DNA of 64,000 nt, taken from positions 159,866-223,865 of the IMG/VR virus record IMGVR_UViG_3300028862_000012. One strand, written 5' to 3'. A program made the translations under genes and the position numbers. This document shows, piece by piece, positions 1-61,906 of this stretch; the first letter of the stretch is position 1; the number at the start of each line of letters is the position of its first letter. The notes under the pieces were generated by a model. The model saw nothing but the letters and a program-made list of their open reading frames with translations. It did no database searches and was not told the DNA's origin.

Positions 1-25
1 GACTTAAAGCTGGAATAAATATATT

Positions 26-259
26 ATGAATAATAAAAGAATTTCTACTTTTGTAGATAACGAGTGGTATGCTTTTTATAGGGATGTTGATAAAGATTAC
101 ATTTGTAATCAAAGTATACTTACTATACTAGAACTATTTTACAACTACCTAAATGACAAGTCAGAGTATTGTAAAAAGCTCATGGACTACTACAATTTAA
201 TTTCAGATAAATATAAAGCTGACTATTGGAAAGAAAGATACGAAAAGGAAATAAAATGA
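26..259 (+). CDS. Hypothetical protein; codons 5-11 overlap a Cas12a repeat handle
   Basis: ORF track, 77 aa; ATGA overlap with next ORF. Confidence 0.7.
   Translation: MNNKRISTFVDNEWYAFYRDVDKDYICNQSILTILELFYNYLNDKSEYCKKLMDYYNLISDKYKADYWKERYEKEIK
40..58 (+). repeat. Solitary Cas12a (type V-A) repeat handle AATTTCTACTTTTGTAGAT
   Basis: Matches the conserved 19-nt 3' end of V-A repeats (AATT-TCTAC-loop-GTAGA-T); identical to the copy at 45912-45930 (-). Confidence 0.75.
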
Positions 260-24826: not shown

Positions 24827-25852
24827 TTATAAGTTTAAATTATATTCTTTTTCTAAGTTTTCTTTTACAATAGTAATTAATTCTCGTATATCACCTTGTG
24901 CATGGCTATCACAACGTAAATCAATTACCTTTTTCCACTGTTCTATATTTGCTGTACTCATAATAGTTGTACTTGTTCCATTTGGCAAAACTTCACGTGC
25001 TGTTTCTGGTAAAGTACCTATATCTATTAAGTCAAAGTATGCTTGTTCCGCTTGAGAATAAGCAGTAAGGTATGGAGCTATTAAAGTAGTACTGGTTAAT
25101 ATATCAGCATTAATCATTGATTGCCTGATTGAGTAAGGTAGAATAAAATCAATTGAATGATTGAACTTATTTGAACTATAATTACAGTATCTTTGACTGG
25201 ATTGCGAAACTGAGTTCTTTCTATGGCGAACTAATTGATGTGATACTGATCTGCTTGTAGTAAATACAAAAGATTCGTAGCAATGTTTATTAATTTCATA
25301 GTTTCTACTATTTTCATTAGGAATAAATTTTAAAAGATCTTTTATTTCTGATATAGTAAGGATAGGAAAAAGATAATCAACATAGTCATCAATATGTTCT
25401 GAAAAAATTATAGGATACAGAATAGTACATGTTTTATAAAACTGTATATAAATATTTTGTTCTCCACATTTTAATAAAGAATAATAAGAATTTTTAAAAA
25501 TATAATTTAGTAATTCATACCAAGCTCTAACATTAGCACTAATAATACTATAACAATATCCATCTTTCAATATACTACTTATATTAAAAAATCCAGCATA
25601 AAAATTACTATCAGGAATAATATTAAAAAGTTTTCTAGTTATGTCTTCAGCATTATCATACACAAGCATTGAAATACTTTCATGCTCTAATATTGATAAA
25701 TGACCTTTTTCAATTATTTTTTTAATAAAAGGAATATAACTATCTTCTTTAATATTATTTTCAGAACGATAACATAACCTTCCAGCATATTCCATTTTCT
25801 TATATGGAACTGTATTAGGAACATAGGTAACAGATGGATCAATAATTTTCAT
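24827..25852 (-). CDS. thyX: FAD-dependent thymidylate synthase
   Basis: AGRLCYRSE, GHLSILEH, RSVSHQLVRHR...SQSSQRY, PETAREVLP, LRCDSHAQGDIR. Confidence 0.93.
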   Translation of the reverse strand: MKIIDPSVTYVPNTVPYKKMEYAGRLCYRSENNIKEDSYIPFIKKIIEKGHLSILEHESISMLVYDNAEDITRKLFNIIPDSNFYAGFFNISSILKDGYCYSIISANVRAWYELLNYIFKNSYYSLLKCGEQNIYIQFYKTCTILYPIIFSEHIDDYVDYLFPILTISEIKDLLKFIPNENSRNYEINKHCYESFVFTTSRSVSHQLVRHRKNSVSQSSQRYCNYSSNKFNHSIDFILPYSIRQSMINADILTSTTLIAPYLTAYSQAEQAYFDLIDIGTLPETAREVLPNGTSTTIMSTANIEQWKKVIDLRCDSHAQGDIRELITIVKENLEKEYNLNL

Positions 25853-39207: not shown

Positions 39208-40675
39208 AGTGCCTCACAATAAAATCATGTTCTAAATATTTATTTCCAATAGTATATCCTTCTGTATTGAGTAAATCAAAGCAAGGTAATATTTTAAAAT
39301 ATTCCATTAAAATACAAGTGTTTTCGTTATTTATTTTATAATATGTTTGATTACTATTTACAGAAATACTTCCATCTGCAAGGCGCAATAATACTTCACT
39401 ATTGAAACAACTACTATGTAATCGCACCTGCACTAAATAGCCAATGCGATTAGTAACTCTGTTGTCTCCATCAATTAATCCTGTAACTACAAATTGACAC
39501 TGTTGTAGAGTATCGAGCGACCATATAGGAATCATAGCATTATAGCTGTTAATTGAATAAGTAGCTATGTTTTCAAATAATTGTTTTACTATTTTAGTCA
39601 TTTAACTTATTCCTTATCTACTCTTAAAGGTAGACTAATAAACTCTGTACTTGTACAATTAAAAGTACAACCATAATGACACTTATAACTAAGATCATAG
39701 GCAACACAGTGATCTATATATCCTGAAGACATATCTAACTTAGAAAACAAATTCATTTTTTCATTATGATGTACAGGACAAAATAAATCTGATTTTTCTA
39801 TTACAGCATCAATATATTCTTTTGCATTAAAAAATTTTTCTTTCATGCTTACTCCAATACTTTTTTAATAACATTCATTGCATGAGTAATGCCATCTTGC
39901 CATGCGTAAAATTGTTCTTCACTCATATTTTTTGGCTTCTTTAAGTTTTCTCTATTAGCAGTAAGTTCTTTAATTAAATCTTCAACTATACTAGTTGATA
40001 TCATGTTAGTTATATTAGAACCAATAGTAGAAGCATATTTACTTTGCATTCCTTGCTGTCTAAGATTATGTTGCACTATACTGTTTGGATCAATATAGTG
40101 ACACATAAGGGTATCGATTAAGCAAATAAAATCATACGTCATTTATGCTTCCATATTTTTATATCTTCTAGTTTAGGTAGTACTACAGTAATAGTAAATC
40201 CAAATAATACTGTAAATAAAGATAGGTATCCTAGAAATAAATAAGCAATACATGTTACAATATCTATTAAAGTAAATTCTTTTTCTGTAATACAAATTAT
40301 TATATAAAGTATTGTTGCTATACCACCACATATAAACCAAGATATTAAAAATTGTGTATCCATAGTTATCTCCTAACTATTTAAAGTTTCATAATCATCA
40401 TTGCTAAAATTCTTAGAAGCCAATTTTAATTGTTTATAATTAAGCCACATGTTAAAATTATTTATGCGATCTTTGCGCTTCATAATTCTACGTGCTACAA
40501 TTCGCGCAACTAAGCTATTAAAACAATAAGCAGTAACAGGTTCATCGTCTTGTAAATAAATTACTACTGTATTATTCATAGTAGTAACACTTTCAATAGT
40601 ACTTACATTAAAACAAGTAATTGAATTATCTTTTGGTAGATATTTTACAAAGATATATTGATAGGGTGCTTTCAT
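39200..40675 (-). other. Five small hypothetical ORFs
   Basis: ORF track. Confidence 0.65.
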
Positions 40676-41850
40676 TTTAATAGTCTCCTTGTGGGTTTAG
40701 CTACTGGAGTACCAGCATCATTCTTTAGATTATTAACACTATCTATTTTAATAAAGTTTAGTATTTCATACATAAATCGAGCTTTAGTAATTCCTTCATC
40801 ATAATTATAAATTTTATCAAAATCAAGTAATAGACGTAGCAGTTTTTCTACTCTATTGATATTATCAAAAAAGTATTTATAGTTCTTTAGCTGATATTCA
40901 TCAAAATCATTTGTGTGACTACGAACAACATAATCAGAAAAAACTTTTATACCGTATTTAATAAAGCTACTTGCAGTAATATCAGTATTTAGATTAAAAG
41001 AAGTAAAGAAGCTTATATCATTGCCTATAATCTTTTTATACAAGTCCATAATAGCAAGATCATTGTCCCAATCAAATAAAGGTAGTGCCTCTTCAATTGT
41101 ATAGGCTTTAGCACTCATTACTGTATCGAAGTCTTGTACTACTTGTCCGACACTTCCATCTGCATGATTAGAAATTTCAATTAATACTTTACCAAAAGTT
41201 TCTATATCAATTTTTTCATCAGGATCAAACTGTTCAAGTAGTGTAAACAAGTAATCACTTAATACATCTTTGCCTACTTTCTTAAACTTCAGTTTTTGAA
41301 CGCGCCGATTAAGTGCTTTCTTCATAGTAGCATCATTACTGATATCACACATGCTGATAATTATGAAAAAAACGCTACTTAGATCGTTTTCCAGAAGATT
41401 AAGTAAAGCACCTTTTGTTTTACTATTACCAAGTGATTGACTTTCATCAATAATATATACAGACTTATCACTAAAAATAGATTGATTTTTAATTTCATCA
41501 GAAATATTTATAATATCCGATTTATCACTCTCACCTGATTTTACAAAAGTAGTATCAAGTTGAAATGAACGAGTAAGAATGTCTCTACAATTTTCGCATT
41601 CCAAACATGGGGTGATAACACCATTAATAATAGTAGTATGTTTACACTGCAATAGCATTGCTATAATATATCCAAGCGTGGTTTTTCCACTACCGCTTTC
41701 ACCATTTAGAAATATAACATTAGGGACTTTTTTTTCAATGAACCAATTATTAATAATATTTACATTGGCAGTTTGTCCAATTACATCTTGAAGTCTATTC
41801 GGTCGTAAAGATTGTGATAACATATATTTTCCTTTTTCATATAGTAGCAT
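40672..41850 (-). CDS. dnaX: Clamp-loader AAA+ ATPase (DNA polymerase III gamma/tau-like)
   Basis: LRPNRLQDVIGQ, Walker A GESGSGKTT, Zn site PCLECENC, Walker B IIDESQ. Confidence 0.85.
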   Translation of the reverse strand: MLLYEKGKYMLSQSLRPNRLQDVIGQTANVNIINNWFIEKKVPNVIFLNGESGSGKTTLGYIIAMLLQCKHTTIINGVITPCLECENCRDILTRSFQLDTTFVKSGESDKSDIINISDEIKNQSIFSDKSVYIIDESQSLGNSKTKGALLNLLENDLSSVFFIIISMCDISNDATMKKALNRRVQKLKFKKVGKDVLSDYLFTLLEQFDPDEKIDIETFGKVLIEISNHADGSVGQVVQDFDTVMSAKAYTIEEALPLFDWDNDLAIMDLYKKIIGNDISFFTSFNLNTDITASSFIKYGIKVFSDYVVRSHTNDFDEYQLKNYKYFFDNINRVEKLLRLLLDFDKIYNYDEGITKARFMYEILNFIKIDSVNNLKNDAGTPVAKPTRRLLK

Positions 41851-45070: not shown

Positions 45071-45847
45071 CTATTTTCCACCATTAATTTTTTCATCCAA
45101 TTGCTGAACCTGAATAGTAAGTACTTCAATCTTATGAATCAGCTTATTTTTCTTTTCCTCAAGTTCTTCTATTTCCTCAAGCTCTTCCATTGGTTCTTTA
45201 ATAATCTGTTTTACCTGATCAATAGTTTTTCCTTGCTGAAGCAAAATAAGTGCCTTTTGTGCTTTATCCAGATCAGAAGTAAGTGCTACAAAAGTTTTAG
45301 CATCAGAACTAATATCATTAGGAATACCCCGAGTAGCAATCTTAACAGTCTTTTTTACTGTTGTTCGCTTAATTCCAATAGTACGATCTGTAATATCTTC
45401 ATATCGTACATTTTCTTCTTTGCAGATAGTCTGTACTTCAATCAGTGCTGTACCCATTTCAGAAGTAAGCTTACTAATTTGTACATCCAGTTCTTTTACC
45501 TTATCAATTTTAGCTTTCAAGTTGTCAGAGATAACTACAGTGTAAAATCCGAGTTTTTCGGCTTTAGTAATTAGATCATAAAAGGTAGACCAAAAGAAAC
45601 TGGTATGTCCTTCCTTACGATTATTTTCTGCATACACTACATGATGAGCTAGTTCATGCAGTGCTGTAAAAAAGAGCAGATTATTGTCATCATTGAAATT
45701 TCGGTTATTTAATAGTATTTCTTTTGTTGCAGGTAAATATTTACCATTTACATTTTTAGATTTCTTTCCAGTAAAAATACAAGTATATTCATTTACGCAA
45801 TGATATACCTTATCCAGATTTTCTTTAACATCATTTTGATTCCACAT
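45071..45847 (-). CDS. SprT-like zinc metalloprotease with C-terminal coiled coil
   Basis: NGKY, TALHELAHH (HExxH), GHTSFFW. Confidence 0.75.
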   Translation of the reverse strand: MWNQNDVKENLDKVYHCVNEYTCIFTGKKSKNVNGKYLPATKEILLNNRNFNDDNNLLFFTALHELAHHVVYAENNRKEGHTSFFWSTFYDLITKAEKLGFYTVVISDNLKAKIDKVKELDVQISKLTSEMGTALIEVQTICKEENVRYEDITDRTIGIKRTTVKKTVKIATRGIPNDISSDAKTFVALTSDLDKAQKALILLQQGKTIDQVKQIIKEPMEELEEIEELEEKKNKLIHKIEVLTIQVQQLDEKINGGK

Positions 45848-45859
45848 ATAACATCCTTT

Positions 45860-45946
45860 ATCTACATAAGTAGAAATTTTAATTTTCTAAATACTCGCAA
45901 GAAATCAATTCATCTACAAAAGTAGAAATTTAAAACCTTCTAAAAT
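45860..45946 (-). CRISPR. Two-repeat Cas12a-type (V-A) mini-array / crRNA mimic
   Basis: Repeats ATTTTAGAAGGTTTTAAATTTCTACTTTTGTAGAT (45946-45912) and GTATTTAGAAAATTAAAATTTCTACTTATGTAGAT (45894-45860), 35 nt each, separated by a 17-nt spacer; no cas12a in window. Confidence 0.8.
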
Positions 45947-45969: not shown

Positions 45970-45998
45970 ACAGTATAACAAAATAAATTATAAGTCAA
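45970..45998 (-). promoter_or_regulatory. Promoter of the mini-array / SprT unit
   Basis: TTGACT-17-TACTGT (overlapping extended TG-n-TATACT). Confidence 0.65.
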
Positions 45999-46430: not shown

Positions 46431-47705
46431 TTACATAAACTCCTTTTCCATACGATGTTCTAAGCTATCAAAAGTAGATGATTTTAATATATTAATTGCT
46501 TTTTCTTTACTTGTATACAGGTTATTTAATTGATTCATGTACAGTGTATTTAATATATTTTTAAACTCTGGACAAGGTTTATAACCAAGTTCTATTAAAG
46601 TATCACCGGTAATAAAAGGAGCAGGAAGGTTAGTATAATTACTGGCAATTTGCTTATTGAAATTATACAAGCTTATATCATAAATAAACTTTTCATTATC
46701 AGAAATCATTACATCACAGACAATAAGCATATCATCAAAAAAATTAGATGCTTTTAAAGTTCGGGTTGTGGCTAAATCAATATGACTATATAATTTTTTA
46801 TAATTACTAATTATATTACAAATGTATTCTATGTCATCATTACTAAATCGTAAAGTACTTAACTCTTCTTTTACTATATCTGTATCCATATTGATAAACA
46901 TCAAACTCAAATATACTTTGTAATTTACTTTATATTTATCAGCACGGAGCAGTCTATCGATCAACAGATTAAGTGTATAGGCATCAGTTACTTCATGCTT
47001 ATACAAGGCAGGGTATATAACATTACATAAATCTTTATAGCCAGTCAATACTTTCATAAAATCACCTACCTTTGACATCAATATTTTTTCAGTAAGTTCT
47101 TTACTGATTCTATCTTTGGCAACATGATTATTAAATTCTGACGAAAAGCTATTTATAAAATCAGGTGAGTAATTAGAGATATATCCATGTACTTGGAAGC
47201 GAATAAAACGCAATAGTCTAAGATAATCTTCTTTAATACGCTCTTCTGGATTTCCTACAAATCGCAATACTTTATTTTCTATATCGCGAACTCCATTAAC
47301 ATAGTCATAGTACTGATTAGTTATAGGATTATAAAACAAGGCATTAATAGTAAAGTCTCGACGCTGTGCATCTTCTTCTATTGAAGCTAATTCCATATGA
47401 TCAAAATGGCGACCGTCACAACCGATTTCTTTTCTAAAACAAGCCAGCTCGAAAGTAAAGTTATTCTTTGATACTAATAGTACTTCAAATGATTTACCTA
47501 CAGATTTACCTACAGATTTCACTATATAGCCGTAATGAGCAAGGATTGGAATACTAATATTAGTTAAGCAATCTGTTGCTATATCTATGTCATTACATGG
47601 TTTATTAGCCAAGGTATCCCGAACATAGCCGCCTGCAAAAACAGCTATATGATTTTCTGATTGGAGGCATTTACATATATCAATAGCTGTTTCTAATTCT
47701 GTCAT
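46431..47705 (-). CDS. cca: CCA-adding tRNA nucleotidyltransferase (class II)
   Basis: AGGYVRD, DIDIAT, RRDFTINAL, EDYLRLLRFIRF; poly(A) polymerase not excluded. Confidence 0.85.
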   Translation of the reverse strand: MTELETAIDICKCLQSENHIAVFAGGYVRDTLANKPCNDIDIATDCLTNISIPILAHYGYIVKSVGKSVGKSFEVLLVSKNNFTFELACFRKEIGCDGRHFDHMELASIEEDAQRRDFTINALFYNPITNQYYDYVNGVRDIENKVLRFVGNPEERIKEDYLRLLRFIRFQVHGYISNYSPDFINSFSSEFNNHVAKDRISKELTEKILMSKVGDFMKVLTGYKDLCNVIYPALYKHEVTDAYTLNLLIDRLLRADKYKVNYKVYLSLMFINMDTDIVKEELSTLRFSNDDIEYICNIISNYKKLYSHIDLATTRTLKASNFFDDMLIVCDVMISDNEKFIYDISLYNFNKQIASNYTNLPAPFITGDTLIELGYKPCPEFKNILNTLYMNQLNNLYTSKEKAINILKSSTFDSLEHRMEKEFM

Positions 47706-57419: not shown

Positions 57420-58523
57420 TTATTTATTAAAATCATATACAGAATATTCTTTCCAGTCAAGAGTAGTTACATGTGTGTTAGCAAATTCAATTATGTCATC
57501 ATAGGTAATAGTATCTAGATGCATTAAATCATTTACTTCGCTACGCCTGTTGTATTCAAAATTATAGCTAAGTTTTACATTATTAATATTCTTTAACTTT
57601 AAACTTATTTCTTTCTTTGATTTGATTTTATTAAACCGGTCTTCAGTAATGTAGCTTAATAGGTTGCTTGTAAACTCTTTTAAATTACTAAAATAGATAT
57701 CTACATTAGCTTTACTTACAGAGCTAGTTATACTAAAGAAAACTCTGTTATTAAAATAAGTAGGATACATTTGCACCCAATAGGCAATACCAAGTTTTTC
57801 TCGAATAAGTTTAACTAAAGGACTAGTCAATCCATCATCCAACATATCAGCAATAAATTGCGCTATGTATAACTTATCTGGGGTTATAGCATTACTTACA
57901 TAGCTTACATCTATACAATTATCGTCAATAGCTTCAATTTTTATAGGTGTAAAATATTGTTGTTTTTCAATAATAGAAAGATCATAATCAGTAGGAGCTA
58001 CTCTTGAATTGCTAAAACTCTGATTACTTGAAATTTCATTTACAGTATAATAGTGAAAATATTTGTTATAATACTCTTTAACTATATCAAAAGTTAGATT
58101 ATCTAATGCTTCCTTTATACCAGCACAACTTACTATACCAAACTTTTGTAAGCATATATTCATATATAAAGCATTATCATTATCTGAAAACATATCATTT
58201 ACTTCTTGCTTTACAATAGGTAGCTCTTTTTCAAAATCTTCCAGTTTCGGAATATAGGTAGTCACACATTTTACAAACTTGTGTTTAACTGTATCAAGTT
58301 CTGAAGCTAATCCGCTAAGAAAGAAAAATACTTCTGTGTCGCTCGTGTAAGCATTATTATACAAACACTTTTCATTAAAAAATTCTTCATATTCTTTATA
58401 GCTATTACATATCATATGTTCAAGTAAATGACATATGCCAAAGGTAGGTAGTGTTTCATGAGTTACAGGGCCAGTGTAACTAATACCAATAAAGTTTTCT
58501 TCTGTGTTCGCGTGTATAAACAT
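57420..58523 (-). CDS. M16 (insulinase-like) zinc peptidase
   Basis: Inverted zincin GICHLLEHM, NAYTS, ELPIVKQE, C-domain IREKLGIAY. Confidence 0.85.
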   Translation of the reverse strand: MFIHANTEENFIGISYTGPVTHETLPTFGICHLLEHMICNSYKEYEEFFNEKCLYNNAYTSDTEVFFFLSGLASELDTVKHKFVKCVTTYIPKLEDFEKELPIVKQEVNDMFSDNDNALYMNICLQKFGIVSCAGIKEALDNLTFDIVKEYYNKYFHYYTVNEISSNQSFSNSRVAPTDYDLSIIEKQQYFTPIKIEAIDDNCIDVSYVSNAITPDKLYIAQFIADMLDDGLTSPLVKLIREKLGIAYWVQMYPTYFNNRVFFSITSSVSKANVDIYFSNLKEFTSNLLSYITEDRFNKIKSKKEISLKLKNINNVKLSYNFEYNRRSEVNDLMHLDTITYDDIIEFANTHVTTLDWKEYSVYDFNK

Positions 58524-60778: not shown

Positions 60779-61906
60779 CTATTCTACTTTACTGGTATCT
60801 TCCTCTGGAATTGAAATAAAAACTTCTTCTGCCTTTTTAGGTGTTCTCTTTGCTGTCTTTTCTTTCTCAATTTCAATAACTTTCTTTTCATTATCTAATC
60901 TCTTGAAAAGTAAATCTCTACACTTTGCAGTAATATCTTTTTCGATTTCTGGATTATTAATTAAAAATTCTTTTACTGCATCTGCTCCCTGTCCAATCTT
61001 TGTTTCTCCATAAGAATACCAAGAACCTTTTTTATCAATGATAAGATTTTTAACTGCAATATCAATAAGACTCTGAATTTTATCTATTCCTTTTCCAAAC
61101 GTGGTACTTACTTCCGTAACCCGTAGAGGAACATTTACTTTATTTTTGATGCATTTTATCTTTACTTGAATTCCAATTATTTCATCTTCGCTTTTTCCGT
61201 TGATTACTGAAGACTTTCTCATATCCAACATTTGAGAGGCATAGTACTTCAAGGCATTTCCTCCACATTGAATTTCTGGAGAGCCAAAAACAATTCCAAT
61301 TTTGGATCTATATTGATTGATTACTATAAATGCTGATTTTGAAGTATTTAAAATTCCTGAAATTCGTCTAAAAAATTGGGAATTTAATTTTGCTGAAACT
61401 CCCATATTGCTATCGCCCGGATCTCCGTTTAGCTCTCGCTCACTTGATAAAACAGCCAAACTATCTAGAACTATAATATCATAAGCATTAGTAGCAATTA
61501 ATTTTTCTATAACTGAAAATGCTTCTTCAGCACTTTTTGGTTGTGATACCCAAAGAGAACTTATATCTACTCCAAGTGCTTCAGCATAGGAAAGATCAAG
61601 CGAGTTTTCACTATCCACAAAGGCGCATATTCCATTATTCTTTTGAGCCTCTGCAATAGTATGCAAAGCTAAAGTAGTTTTAGAGCTTGCTTCATTTCCA
61701 ACATTAACACTGATACGGCCTCTGGCATACCCGCCACCTAAAACAGAATCAATGGATAGAATTCCTGTTGATAAAAACTCTACTCTATCAATAGGCTCAT
61801 CTCCCATTCTTCGTATAACTCCCTCCCCATGTTCCTTAATAATCTCTGTCTGCATCTTCTTAATCTTTTCTAATTTCTCTTCTTTCGTCATTCCATTTGT
61901 TGCCAT
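60779..61906 (-). CDS. recA: RecA recombinase
   Basis: STGILSIDSVLGGG, FVDSEN.LD..YA..LGVD, IVLDSLAVL, GGNALKYYAS, KNKV..P, GSWYSYG. Confidence 0.95.
   Translation of the reverse strand: MATNGMTKEEKLEKIKKMQTEIIKEHGEGVIRRMGDEPIDRVEFLSTGILSIDSVLGGGYARGRISVNVGNEASSKTTLALHTIAEAQKNNGICAFVDSENSLDLSYAEALGVDISSLWVSQPKSAEEAFSVIEKLIATNAYDIIVLDSLAVLSSERELNGDPGDSNMGVSAKLNSQFFRRISGILNTSKSAFIVINQYRSKIGIVFGSPEIQCGGNALKYYASQMLDMRKSSVINGKSEDEIIGIQVKIKCIKNKVNVPLRVTEVSTTFGKGIDKIQSLIDIAVKNLIIDKKGSWYSYGETKIGQGADAVKEFLINNPEIEKDITAKCRDLLFKRLDNEKKVIEIEKEKTAKRTPKKAEEVFISIPEEDTSKVE

What the first reader, a model, noticed from the sequence alone, without database searches (positions are those of the whole stretch)
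40..82. Exact Cas12a crRNA handle hidden inside a protein-coding sequence
Seen: AATTTCTACTTTTGTAGAT at 40-58 encodes part of RISTFVD in ORF 26..259 and is identical over 19 nt to the handle at 45912-45930, 46 kb away. Known: Cas12a processes its own pre-crRNA by recognising this 5-bp stem handle and loads the next ~23 nt. Inference: the mRNA could be cut by host Cas12a, releasing a decoy or guide (AACGAGUGGUAUGCUUUUUAUAGG) and also switching the gene off. That would make it a dual-coding crRNA mimic.
Basis: partly seen in the sequence, partly recalled or inferred. Interest (0 to 1): 0.72.

Follow-up and report, generated by a model that had tools for sequence, protein, structure and literature searches.

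The report
Cas12a guide-RNA mimics in phage transcripts
A 224-kb phage from peat carries three copies of the short RNA hairpin that the bacterial defence enzyme Cas12a uses to recognise its guide RNAs, each at the front of a phage gene and one overlapping the gene's first codons; they are most likely decoys of a known kind in an unusual position.

Summary
The 19-nt type V-A handle sits at 40-58(+) in codons 5-11 of ORF 26..259. An identical copy lies at 45912-45930(-) and a copy with one loop mismatch at 45860-45878(-). The 224-kb genome has no others, and composition predicts 3.6e-5 chance copies. The window is the end of a phage genome that has no cas12a gene.

The ORF is a real gene. Its only homologue (47% identity, in a distantly related phage) lacks the codons that hold the handle. 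The two distant copies form a two-repeat mini-array between a promoter-like site and the ribosome-binding site of a SprT-like gene; that gene's closest homologue (65% identity) has no array.

All copies read in the sense of local transcription. Copy A and the mini-array each follow a near-consensus sigma-70-like promoter, and the one before copy A would start transcription after the ATG.

The best reading is phage crRNA mimics of the known solitary-repeat/Racr/Cracr kind, placed in 5' leaders, with the coding overlap a tolerated side effect. No target was found for any pseudo-spacer. The host is unknown and no RNA data exist. This is a new variant of a known kind, of moderate interest.

The parts
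1..27 (+). Sigma-70-like promoter P_A: -35 TTGACT (starts 2 nt before the window, ends at 4), 17-nt spacer, -10 TATTAT at 22-27 (alternative TATATT at 20-25). It overlaps the stop of the upstream gene (15-17) and the ATG at 26. The predicted transcription start is about 33-35, after the ATG and about 5 nt before the handle.
   Evidence: It is the best + strand hit in L001 (10 of 12). It is one of only 7 TTGACT sites with a good -10 box in the genome. The chance of a 10/12 site within 60 nt upstream of a given position is 0.048. This is a consensus match only, with no transcript data.
26..259 (+). Gene for the 77-aa protein P0001 (function unknown, weakly helical/TPR-like). Its stop overlaps the next gene's start (ATGA at 256-259). 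There is no Shine-Dalgarno motif before the ATG.
   Evidence: The homologue P0002 is 47% identical over residues 14-71 and sits in a phage that shares 10 of 22 neighbouring genes. One search gave the weak fold hint.
40..58 (+). Copy A: the exact 19-nt V-A crRNA 5' handle (stem TCTAC/GTAGA, loop TTTT), read as codons 5-11. These codons are absent from the homologue.
59..82 (+). Pseudo-spacer of copy A (AACGAG...ATAGG), which is coding sequence for N12-R19. No target was found. Its own locus has AGAT in the PAM position.
92..110 (+). Weak lead: hairpin A' with the handle's geometry (5 Watson-Crick pairs, two of them changed on both sides; 11 of 19 bases identical). It starts exactly 52 nt after copy A, the same period as B to C. 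It lies in the conserved KDYxC codons.
   Evidence: Such sites occur at 1.25e-4 per nt per strand. It was noticed post hoc and may be chance.
45972..45998 (-). Sigma-70-like promoter P_B: -35 TTGACT at 45998-45993, 15-nt spacer, TGn plus -10 TATACT at 45977-45972. It follows a terminator-like hairpin (about 46034-46007) of the upstream gene.
   Evidence: The tool missed it because it only allows spacers of 16-18 nt.
45912..45946 (-). Copy B: a full-length repeat of about 35 nt whose last 19 nt (45930-45912) are the exact handle.
   Evidence: Its 5' half resembles that of copy C (shared TTTAGAA...TT...A).
45894..45911 (-). Spacer of the mini-array, about 18 nt (GAATTGATTTCTTGCGAG).
   Evidence: Its exact matches in 3 viral contigs have no TTTV PAM, do not extend, and number about what chance predicts.
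45860..45893 (-). Copy C: the second repeat. Its handle at 45878-45860 has one mismatch, in the loop (TTAT). It ends 12 nt before the ATG of the next gene, so its pseudo-spacer is that gene's Shine-Dalgarno motif (AAGGA) and start codon.
45071..45847 (-). Gene for a 258-aa SprT-like/HExxH protein, immediately downstream of the mini-array. Homologues in other phages, and one named MAG protein from Spirochaetales, have no array upstream.

Best explanation
The three handles are phage-encoded mimics of type V-A CRISPR RNA. They belong to the known class of viral solitary repeat units and mini-arrays (Racr/Cracr-type RNA anti-CRISPRs) but are placed at the 5' boundary of two phage transcription units instead of in stand-alone small-RNA genes.

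Shown by the sequence:
- The mature-handle sequence is exact, with identity ending at the handle borders.
- All copies are in the sense orientation.
- A promoter-like site precedes copy A and the mini-array.
- The phage has no cas12a gene.
- The handle is absent from the nearest homologous loci.

Inferred from established Cas12a biochemistry (Cas12a binds the 19-nt handle, cuts just 5' of it and keeps about 20-24 nt downstream as guide; a 19-nt repeat is enough in engineered arrays and in mRNAs):
- In a host with a Cas12a that uses this handle, phage transcripts from P_A and P_B would be bound and processed.
- Each would load a Cas12a molecule with a guide that has no PAM-flanked target, so Cas12a would be drawn away from the host's phage-targeting crRNAs.

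The overlap with codons 5-11 of P0001 is best read as a tolerated by-product. The handle is stop-free in two of its three frames, and the N-terminus is not conserved. It arose either as a 27-nt in-frame insertion or as an N-terminal extension through a former 5'-UTR handle.

A side effect follows on read-through mRNAs. Cas12a and the initiating ribosome would compete for the same 30 nt, and cleavage would separate the AUG from the ORF.
For: - Non-chance, exact handle copies confined to three sites.
- The 19-mer is the 3' part of repeats in natural V-A-type arrays.
- The stem-loop forms in the minimum-energy and centroid folds of 1-140.
- The single mismatch of copy C falls in the loop, the part that I recall varying among Cas12a orthologues (my own knowledge, not tested here).
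- No Cas12a in the phage.
- Sigma-70-like promoters lie 12-14 nt (A) and 41 nt (B) upstream, with joint chance about 0.002. [quoted passage not shown]
- The 14 distinct other viral contexts (16 loci) with the exact 19-mer are all solitary and mostly non-coding. Five have a terminator 23-92 nt downstream and four a Shine-Dalgarno plus ATG 34-86 nt downstream.
- RacrVA1-3 inhibit MbCas12a (PMC10651486). CracrVA1 is a 19-nt handle plus a 21-nt guide and is processed by Cas12a (bioRxiv 10.1101/2024.10.29.618823).
- The homologues of both flanking genes lack the handles, so these are lineage-specific additions, not protein-driven sequence.
Against: - There are no transcript data and no identified host.
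- None of 1,183 spacers from 120 V-A loci matches the phage convincingly.
- The 5' halves of repeats B and C resemble no host repeat examined.
- Only one genome lineage carries these handles, so conservation or purifying selection on them cannot be shown.
- There is no terminator after copy A or the array, unlike typical Racr/Cracr genes.
- Promoter calls in 29% GC DNA are weak evidence: one search found 21 sites against 21 expected in shuffles.
- An exact 19-mer can sit in coding DNA for unrelated reasons, as it does antisense in a conserved gene of Bacillaceae.
Confidence: 0.5

Rival explanations
1. Relic or hitch-hiker. Copy A is a non-functional remnant, for example a fragment of a decayed solitary repeat unit or a copy of the array repeat, that was absorbed into the N-terminus of P0001. 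Only the B-C mini-array, if anything, is active.
For: The only homologue lacks it. The handle is stop-free in 2 of 3 frames, so absorption costs little. No target was found. No terminator follows it. No second lineage shows that it is maintained.
Against: All 19 positions are intact and identity ends exactly at the functional borders, not at arbitrary recombination borders. It is in sense orientation and sits right behind the best promoter-like site of the locus. A decaying relic would be expected to have lost stem pairs.
Confidence: 0.2
2. Guide or repressor rather than decoy. One or more of the RNAs directs host Cas12a to a real target. That target could be a competing phage (mini-array model) or the host's cas12a promoter through a partial match of about 10 nt (Cracr model). 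The free 18-nt spacer of copy B is the likeliest candidate.
For: Viral mini-arrays usually target related viruses (PMC11656645). CracrVA1 needs only 10 PAM-proximal matches (bioRxiv 10.1101/2024.10.29.618823). The B spacer is short (about 18 nt), as expected for binding with poor cleavage.
Against: The B 18-mer hits 3 viral contigs without a TTTV PAM, without extension and at chance frequency. The A 20-mer hits only the phage itself. A seed-plus-PAM scan of about 1 Mb of V-A-bearing loci gave one 10-nt hit, inside an ORF, which is about what chance predicts. The pseudo-spacers of A and C are constrained by coding sequence and by the ribosome-binding site.
Confidence: 0.12
3. Cas12a-sensing switch. 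The handles exist to couple expression of the downstream genes (P0001 and the SprT-like protein) to the presence of Cas12a, by decapitating the mRNA at A and by occluding the ribosome-binding site and AUG at C.
For: The geometry fits. Handle A starts 14 nt after the AUG. Handle C ends 12 nt before the AUG, so its 20-24-nt 'guide' would be the Shine-Dalgarno motif plus start codon. Both handles sit at gene 5' ends.
Against: There is no evidence that either protein relates to CRISPR. Homologues work without handles. No precedent is known to me. The predicted transcript from P_A lacks the AUG anyway.
Confidence: 0.1
4. Pure coincidence: the 19-mer arose by chance in an AT-rich coding sequence.
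For: Chance or protein-driven copies do exist in very large databases (Bacillaceae gene).
Against: The expected number in this genome is 3.6e-5. The same genome holds two more copies arranged as an array. The protein family does not require these codons.
Confidence: 0.02

Closest known systems
Viral solitary repeat units / RNA anti-CRISPRs (Racr; RacrVA1-3), Camara-Wilpert et al. 2023, PMC10651486
   Same: A CRISPR-repeat mimic in a phage without cas genes. It is solitary (copy A), follows a promoter-like site, and is presumed to sequester the Cas effector. Type V-A examples were shown to inhibit MbCas12a.
   Different: Racrs are defined as small non-coding RNAs in intergenic regions. Copy A overlaps codons 5-11 of a real gene, has no terminator and continues into an mRNA. 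SRUFinder masks predicted ORFs and treats intragenic hits as probable false positives, so this class of position was not surveyed.
Cas-repressing RNA anti-CRISPRs (CracrVA1) and host CreR, bioRxiv 10.1101/2024.10.29.618823
   Same: A 19-nt V-A handle followed by a guide of about 21 nt, expressed from its own promoter in an uncultured phage. Arrays of such units exist.
   Different: A Cracr guide matches the host cas12a promoter over about 10 PAM-proximal nt and the unit ends in a terminator. No such match could be found here, the host is unknown, and two of the three 'guides' are coding or ribosome-binding-site sequence.
Viral CRISPR mini-arrays (Faure et al. 2019, recalled from memory and not read here; reviewed in PMC11656645, which was read)
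   Same: Copies B and C form a repeat-spacer-repeat unit in a virus that lacks cas genes.
   Different: The period is 52 nt, against 61-66 nt in natural V-A arrays. The spacer is only about 18 nt and has no PAM-flanked protospacer. The 5' halves of the repeats match no host repeat examined. The second repeat abuts a gene's ribosome-binding site.
Engineered Cas12a crRNAs excised from mRNAs
   Same: A minimal 19-20-nt repeat inside a protein-coding transcript is enough for Cas12a to process it and load the guide.
   Different: Those are synthetic constructs with the repeat in a UTR. Here the arrangement is natural and overlaps the first codons.

Membership tests
Type V-A CRISPR repeat (Cas12a crRNA 5' handle) | 3'-terminal 19 nt of the repeat: AAUUUCUAC, a loop, then GUAGAU | tested here: met
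   Exact in copies A and B, with one loop mismatch in C. The same 19-mer ends the repeats of dozens of natural arrays.
Type V-A CRISPR repeat (Cas12a crRNA 5' handle) | Forms the 5-bp stem with a 4-nt loop in its RNA context | tested here: met
   The stem forms for copy A in both the minimum-energy and centroid folds of 1-140. For B and C the result is mixed: C forms in the minimum-energy fold, while B is drawn into alternative pairing.
Type V-A CRISPR repeat (Cas12a crRNA 5' handle) | Part of a CRISPR-cas locus (cas12a nearby, regular array with a period of about 61-66 nt) | tested here: not met
   No Cas12a match in the genome and no ORF longer than 942 aa. There are only 3 copies, and the B-C period is 52 nt.
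Solitary repeat unit / Racr | Repeat mimic on a mobile element, not associated with cas genes or further repeats | tested here: met
   Copy A has no full repeat within 100 nt; only the weak hairpin A' lies nearby. The phage has no cas genes.
Solitary repeat unit / Racr | Intergenic small non-coding RNA with its own promoter and an end | tested here: not met
   It overlaps the called gene P0001. A promoter-like site is present, but there is no terminator downstream.
Solitary repeat unit / Racr | Binds Cas proteins and inhibits interference | not testable with these tools
   This needs biochemistry or plaque assays. No RNA runs were listed.
Cracr / CreR-like regulatory crRNA | Pseudo-spacer with at least 9-10 PAM-proximal matches to a cas promoter flanked by a PAM | tested here: inconclusive
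   The only hit was a chance-level one inside an ORF, in about 1 Mb of loci from 120 V-A-bearing genomes. The true host locus is not available.
Viral CRISPR mini-array | Two or more repeats flanking a spacer | tested here: met
   Copies B and C have similar 5' halves and an 18-nt spacer between them.
Viral CRISPR mini-array | Spacer matches a PAM-flanked protospacer in a related virus or the host | tested here: not met
   the 18-mer matches have no TTTV PAM and occur at chance frequency.
Viral CRISPR mini-array | Repeats identical to those of the host's array | tested here: inconclusive
   The handle half is identical to natural repeats, but the 5' half is unlike any of 120 loci. The host is unknown.

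The most novel reading that the evidence does not exclude
The phage deliberately places Cas12a handles at the 5' boundary of its own cistrons. Host Cas12a then processes the phage mRNAs and stays clamped on them. The same 19 nt would be at once codons, a Cas12a sponge and a Cas12a-dependent switch of the downstream genes: AUG removal at P0001, and occlusion of the ribosome-binding site at the SprT-like gene. That would be a natural dual-coding, effector-sensing riboregulator, in a class of intragenic repeat mimics that ORF-masking searches have skipped.
Probability: 0.12. Interest if true: 0.8.

Novelty: new variant of a known kind. Interest (0 to 1): 0.5.

Why it matters
RNA anti-CRISPRs are a recent discovery, and the catalogues of them were built after masking predicted ORFs. 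If a handle that overlaps a gene's first codons works, those catalogues undercount such elements. It would also mean that one short sequence can serve as codons and as an effector-binding RNA. A natural Cas12a handle at an mRNA's 5' edge would further show whether a CRISPR effector can be drawn into controlling phage gene expression. If copy A is inert, the locus is simply one more phage with a V-A mini-array, which is ordinary.

Tried and rejected
- **More homologues of P0001.** I tried a word-indexed search of 5.8 billion proteins, a full HMMER search of 1.8 billion representatives, and scans of viral and metagenome contigs with the protein and with the two-sequence alignment. The family is P0001 plus one homologue, so synonymous-site conservation cannot be tested.
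- **Second genome of the phage.** The other contig is 100% identical and adds nothing.
- **Targets.** The A 20-mer occurs only in the phage itself. The B 18-mer has chance-level hits without a PAM. The one seed-plus-PAM hit (L043) lies inside an ORF. In the phage's own genome the pseudo-spacers occur only at their own loci, with AGAT in the PAM position.
- **Host identification.**
  - Repeat 5' halves match no host repeat examined.
  - 1,183 spacers from V-A arrays were compared with the phage; the best was 21 of 22 outside the seed and was rejected.
  - RecA relatives are about 48% identical across many phyla.
  - There are no tRNAs in the window.
  - The one named SprT-like homologue is a Spirochaetales MAG protein at 29% identity, which is a lead only.
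- **Conservation of the mini-array.** Close relatives of the neighbouring CCA-adding enzyme and of the SprT-like gene are absent from viral contigs and from cultured phages. Four homologous loci from other assemblies have no handle.
- **Rfam.** No family matched in the window.
- **RNA evidence.** No RNA run was listed. The DNA contigs only confirm the sequence.
- **The homologue's 82-kb contig.** It could not be searched beyond the 8.4 kb fetched.
- **Near-handle outside the window.** The near-handle at genome position 152564(-) has 3 mismatches, a broken stem and lies antisense to a gene, so I treated it as chance.

Full report
**What the window is.** The window is the last 64 kb (159866-223865) of a 223,865-bp virus record with 29% GC, estimated 91% complete, from a peat metagenome. 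It is packed with small ORFs. These are on the + strand up to about 24.4 kb and mostly on the - strand after that. It encodes RecA, ThyX, a clamp-loader-like ATPase, a CCA-adding/poly(A)-polymerase-family enzyme and an M16-like peptidase. No Cas12a is encoded: there is no match to TIGR04330 and no ORF longer than 942 aa.

**The observation.** The 19-mer AATTTCTACTTTTGTAGAT is at 40-58(+), inside ORF 26..259, running from the last base of codon 5 (AGA, R) through codon 11. A second exact copy is at 45912-45930 on the - strand, and a third at 45860-45878(-) has one mismatch in the loop.
- The whole genome has no further copy. Composition predicts 3.6e-5 exact copies.
- Identity between copies A and B ends exactly at the 19-nt borders: 5' at the site where Cas12a cuts pre-crRNA, and 3' at the repeat/spacer junction.
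- The same 19-mer ends the repeats of many natural arrays with the V-A repeat period, mostly in Patescibacteria MAGs, with some in Gammaproteobacteria, Succinivibrionaceae and Campylobacteraceae. It is therefore a genuine natural V-A handle.
- The sequence is confirmed by a second contig from another sample and by Logan's assembly of the source run.

**The gene around copy A is real, but the handle is not part of the family.**
- P0001 (77 aa) was called by the public gene callers, and its stop overlaps the next start (ATGA at 256-259).
- A full HMMER search of 1.8 billion representatives found one homologue, P0002 (67 aa, E 3.9e-9; 47% identity over residues 14-71).
- P0002 sits in an 82-kb contig of a distantly related phage (31% GC) that shares 10 of 22 neighbouring genes with this genome at 26-58% identity.
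- In the protein alignment both proteins start with MN. P0001 then has nine extra residues (NKRISTFVD) before the conserved body. The homologous locus has no handle-like hairpin.
- The DNA alignment offers a second reading: the homologue's ATG-AAT aligns with GAT-AAC here, which is the 3' end of the handle. So either 27 nt were inserted in frame, or a handle that once lay in the 5' UTR was taken into the ORF by an N-terminal extension. With two sequences the direction cannot be decided.
- Either way the handle codons are lineage-specific and dispensable for the protein.
- The overlap is cheap. The handle is stop-free in two of three frames, and the frame in use gives common AT-rich codons.

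**Copy A sits behind a promoter-like site that overlaps the start codon.**
- The best + strand sigma-70-like match in the 3-kb locus is TTGACT, a 17-nt spacer, then TATTAT ending at window 27.
- That puts a transcription start near 33-35, after the ATG at 26 and about 5 nt before the handle.
- Only seven TTGACT sites with a good -10 box exist in the genome, and two of them precede copy A and copy B.
- With a neutral definition (at least 10 of 12 matches, spacer 15-19 nt), the chance of such a site within 60 nt upstream of a given position is 0.048. Both A and B have one.
- The ATG of P0001 has no Shine-Dalgarno motif, whereas 67% of the larger ORFs have one.
- These are consensus matches in AT-rich DNA, not proof. 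The layout of promoter followed by handle is nevertheless the one described for viral solitary repeat units (PMC10651486).

**The distant copies are a mini-array in the leader of another gene.** On the - strand the order is as follows.
1. A terminator-like hairpin of the upstream gene.
2. TTGACT, 15 nt, then TGnTATACT.
3. A leader of about 35 nt.
4. Repeat B (about 35 nt).
5. An 18-nt spacer.
6. Repeat C.
7. Twelve nt containing AAGGA.
8. The ATG (45847) of a 258-aa SprT-like/HExxH protein.

The period is 52 nt, against 61-66 nt in natural arrays. The guide that copy C would present is the gene's own ribosome-binding site and start codon. The closest homologue of this protein (65% identity, 28% GC contig) directly abuts a methyltransferase gene with no handle, and three more distant homologous loci have none either. 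Both handle loci are therefore additions specific to this phage line, each at a gene's 5' boundary, and each in the sense of local transcription.

**Comparison with other phages.** The exact 19-mer occurs in 16 other loci among 2.9 million viral contigs, which reduce to 14 distinct contexts.
- All are solitary, and all but two lie outside long open frames.
- Five are followed by a terminator 23-92 nt downstream, the small-RNA layout of Racr/Cracr genes. Four are followed by a Shine-Dalgarno motif and ATG 34-86 nt downstream, a leader layout like copy C.
- Copy A is the only one inside a gene that a homologue supports as real.

**Targets.** No pseudo-spacer has a convincing target.
- The A 20-mer occurs only in this phage. 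At its own locus the PAM position reads AGAT, so it would not self-target.
- The B 18-mer matches three contigs from two unrelated phages with TTAG or TGCG in the PAM position and no extension. By my rough estimate (assuming about 1e11 searchable positions) an 18-mer should hit one or two times by chance.
- A seed-plus-PAM scan of about 1 Mb from 120 V-A-bearing genomes gave one 10-nt hit inside an ORF, which is about the chance expectation.
- The host remains unknown, so the Cracr test against the host's cas12a promoter could not be done.

**Mechanism.** Established biochemistry, recalled from my own knowledge for Cas12a in general, says that Cas12a binds the 19-nt handle, cuts just 5' of it and keeps the next 20-24 nt. 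A minimal 19-20-nt repeat suffices, even inside mRNAs. CracrVA1 was shown to be processed in this way (bioRxiv 10.1101/2024.10.29.618823), and RacrVA1-3 inhibit MbCas12a (PMC10651486).

I therefore think the most likely function is a decoy. Transcripts from P_A and P_B would each take up Cas12a molecules with guides that have no target, competing with the host's phage-directed crRNAs (confidence about 0.5).

On read-through mRNAs from upstream, the handle begins 14 nt after the AUG. Cas12a and an initiating ribosome would then exclude each other, and cleavage would remove the AUG.

The rivals are:
- an inert relic at A (0.2);
- a true guide or Cracr-type repressor, most plausibly copy B (0.12);
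- a Cas12a-sensing switch (0.1);
- coincidence (0.02).

**Novelty.** Phage V-A repeat mimics are known, so the kind is not new. What differs here is the placement. One handle overlaps the first codons of a real gene, and a short-period mini-array is fused to a gene's ribosome-binding site, with no terminators, in a jumbo phage. SRUFinder masks confident ORFs and uses intragenic hits as its false-positive set (methods of PMC10651486), so such positions have not been surveyed. I rate this a new variant of a known kind, of moderate interest and untested function.

**A control worth keeping in mind.** The same 19-mer also lies antisense inside a conserved gene of about 470 aa in many Bacillaceae and in Mammaliicoccus, where it is surely protein-driven. 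An exact handle in coding DNA is not by itself evidence of CRISPR biology. Here the case rests on the three copies in one 224-kb genome, their array arrangement, their orientation, and their absence from the homologues.

Noticed in passing
window 92-110 (+): A hairpin GATTAC-ATTT-GTAATC has the same geometry as the handle (5 Watson-Crick pairs, two changed on both sides; 11 of 19 bases identical). It starts exactly 52 nt after copy A, the same period as copies B to C. It lies in the conserved KDYxC codons, and the homologue has no hairpin there. Such sites occur at 1.25e-4 per nt, but I noticed it post hoc.
   Followed up: partly
loci L033, L040, L051, L057, L059, L088, L091, L098 and others (Bacillus, Priestia, Caryophanon, Mammaliicoccus): The exact V-A 19-mer occurs once per genome with conserved flanks, antisense inside a conserved ORF of about 470 aa. 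It is a protein-driven look-alike in bacteria that I do not know to carry Cas12a (my own knowledge). It is a useful false-positive control for handle searches.
   Followed up: partly
genome 152981 (+) and 152564 (-), which are window -6884 and -7301, outside the window: There are two handle-like sites. TATATCTTCTATTGAAGAT has 14 of 19 bases identical with a full compensated stem, and lies in the sense strand of a 413-aa ORF. AATTTCTACTCGTGTAGTT has 3 mismatches and a broken terminal pair, and lies antisense. Both are within background counts.
   Followed up: no
window 60779-61906 (-), 24827-25852 (-), 46431-47705 (-), 40672-41850 (-), 57420-58523 (-): The phage encodes a bacterial-type RecA (E 9e-81; about 48% identical to RecA of many phyla), ThyX, a CCA-adding/poly(A)-polymerase-family enzyme, a clamp-loader-like AAA+ protein and an M16-like peptidase. 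There are no tRNA genes in the window.
   Followed up: partly
window 45071-45847 (-) and L147 1169-1945: The SprT-like/HExxH protein belongs to a small family without a Pfam family of its own. It is found in phage contigs, and one named MAG protein comes from Spirochaetales (29% identity). The atlas's automatic clusters also point to Spirochaetota and viruses. This could hint at the host phylum.
   Followed up: partly
L144 and L146 (same phage), L145: The 18-nt spacer of the mini-array matches three IMG/VR contigs of 41-45% GC exactly. One has TTTAG just upstream, so a TTTA PAM is one base out of register. I judged these chance matches.
   Followed up: yes
window -1..7 and 45998-45990 (-): The two promoter-like sites before copies A and B share the 9-mer ATTGACTTA, and the upstream region of the SprT homologue in L147 contains the 10-mer TTGACTTATA, also present at P_B. 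This may be a promoter consensus of this phage group.
   Followed up: no
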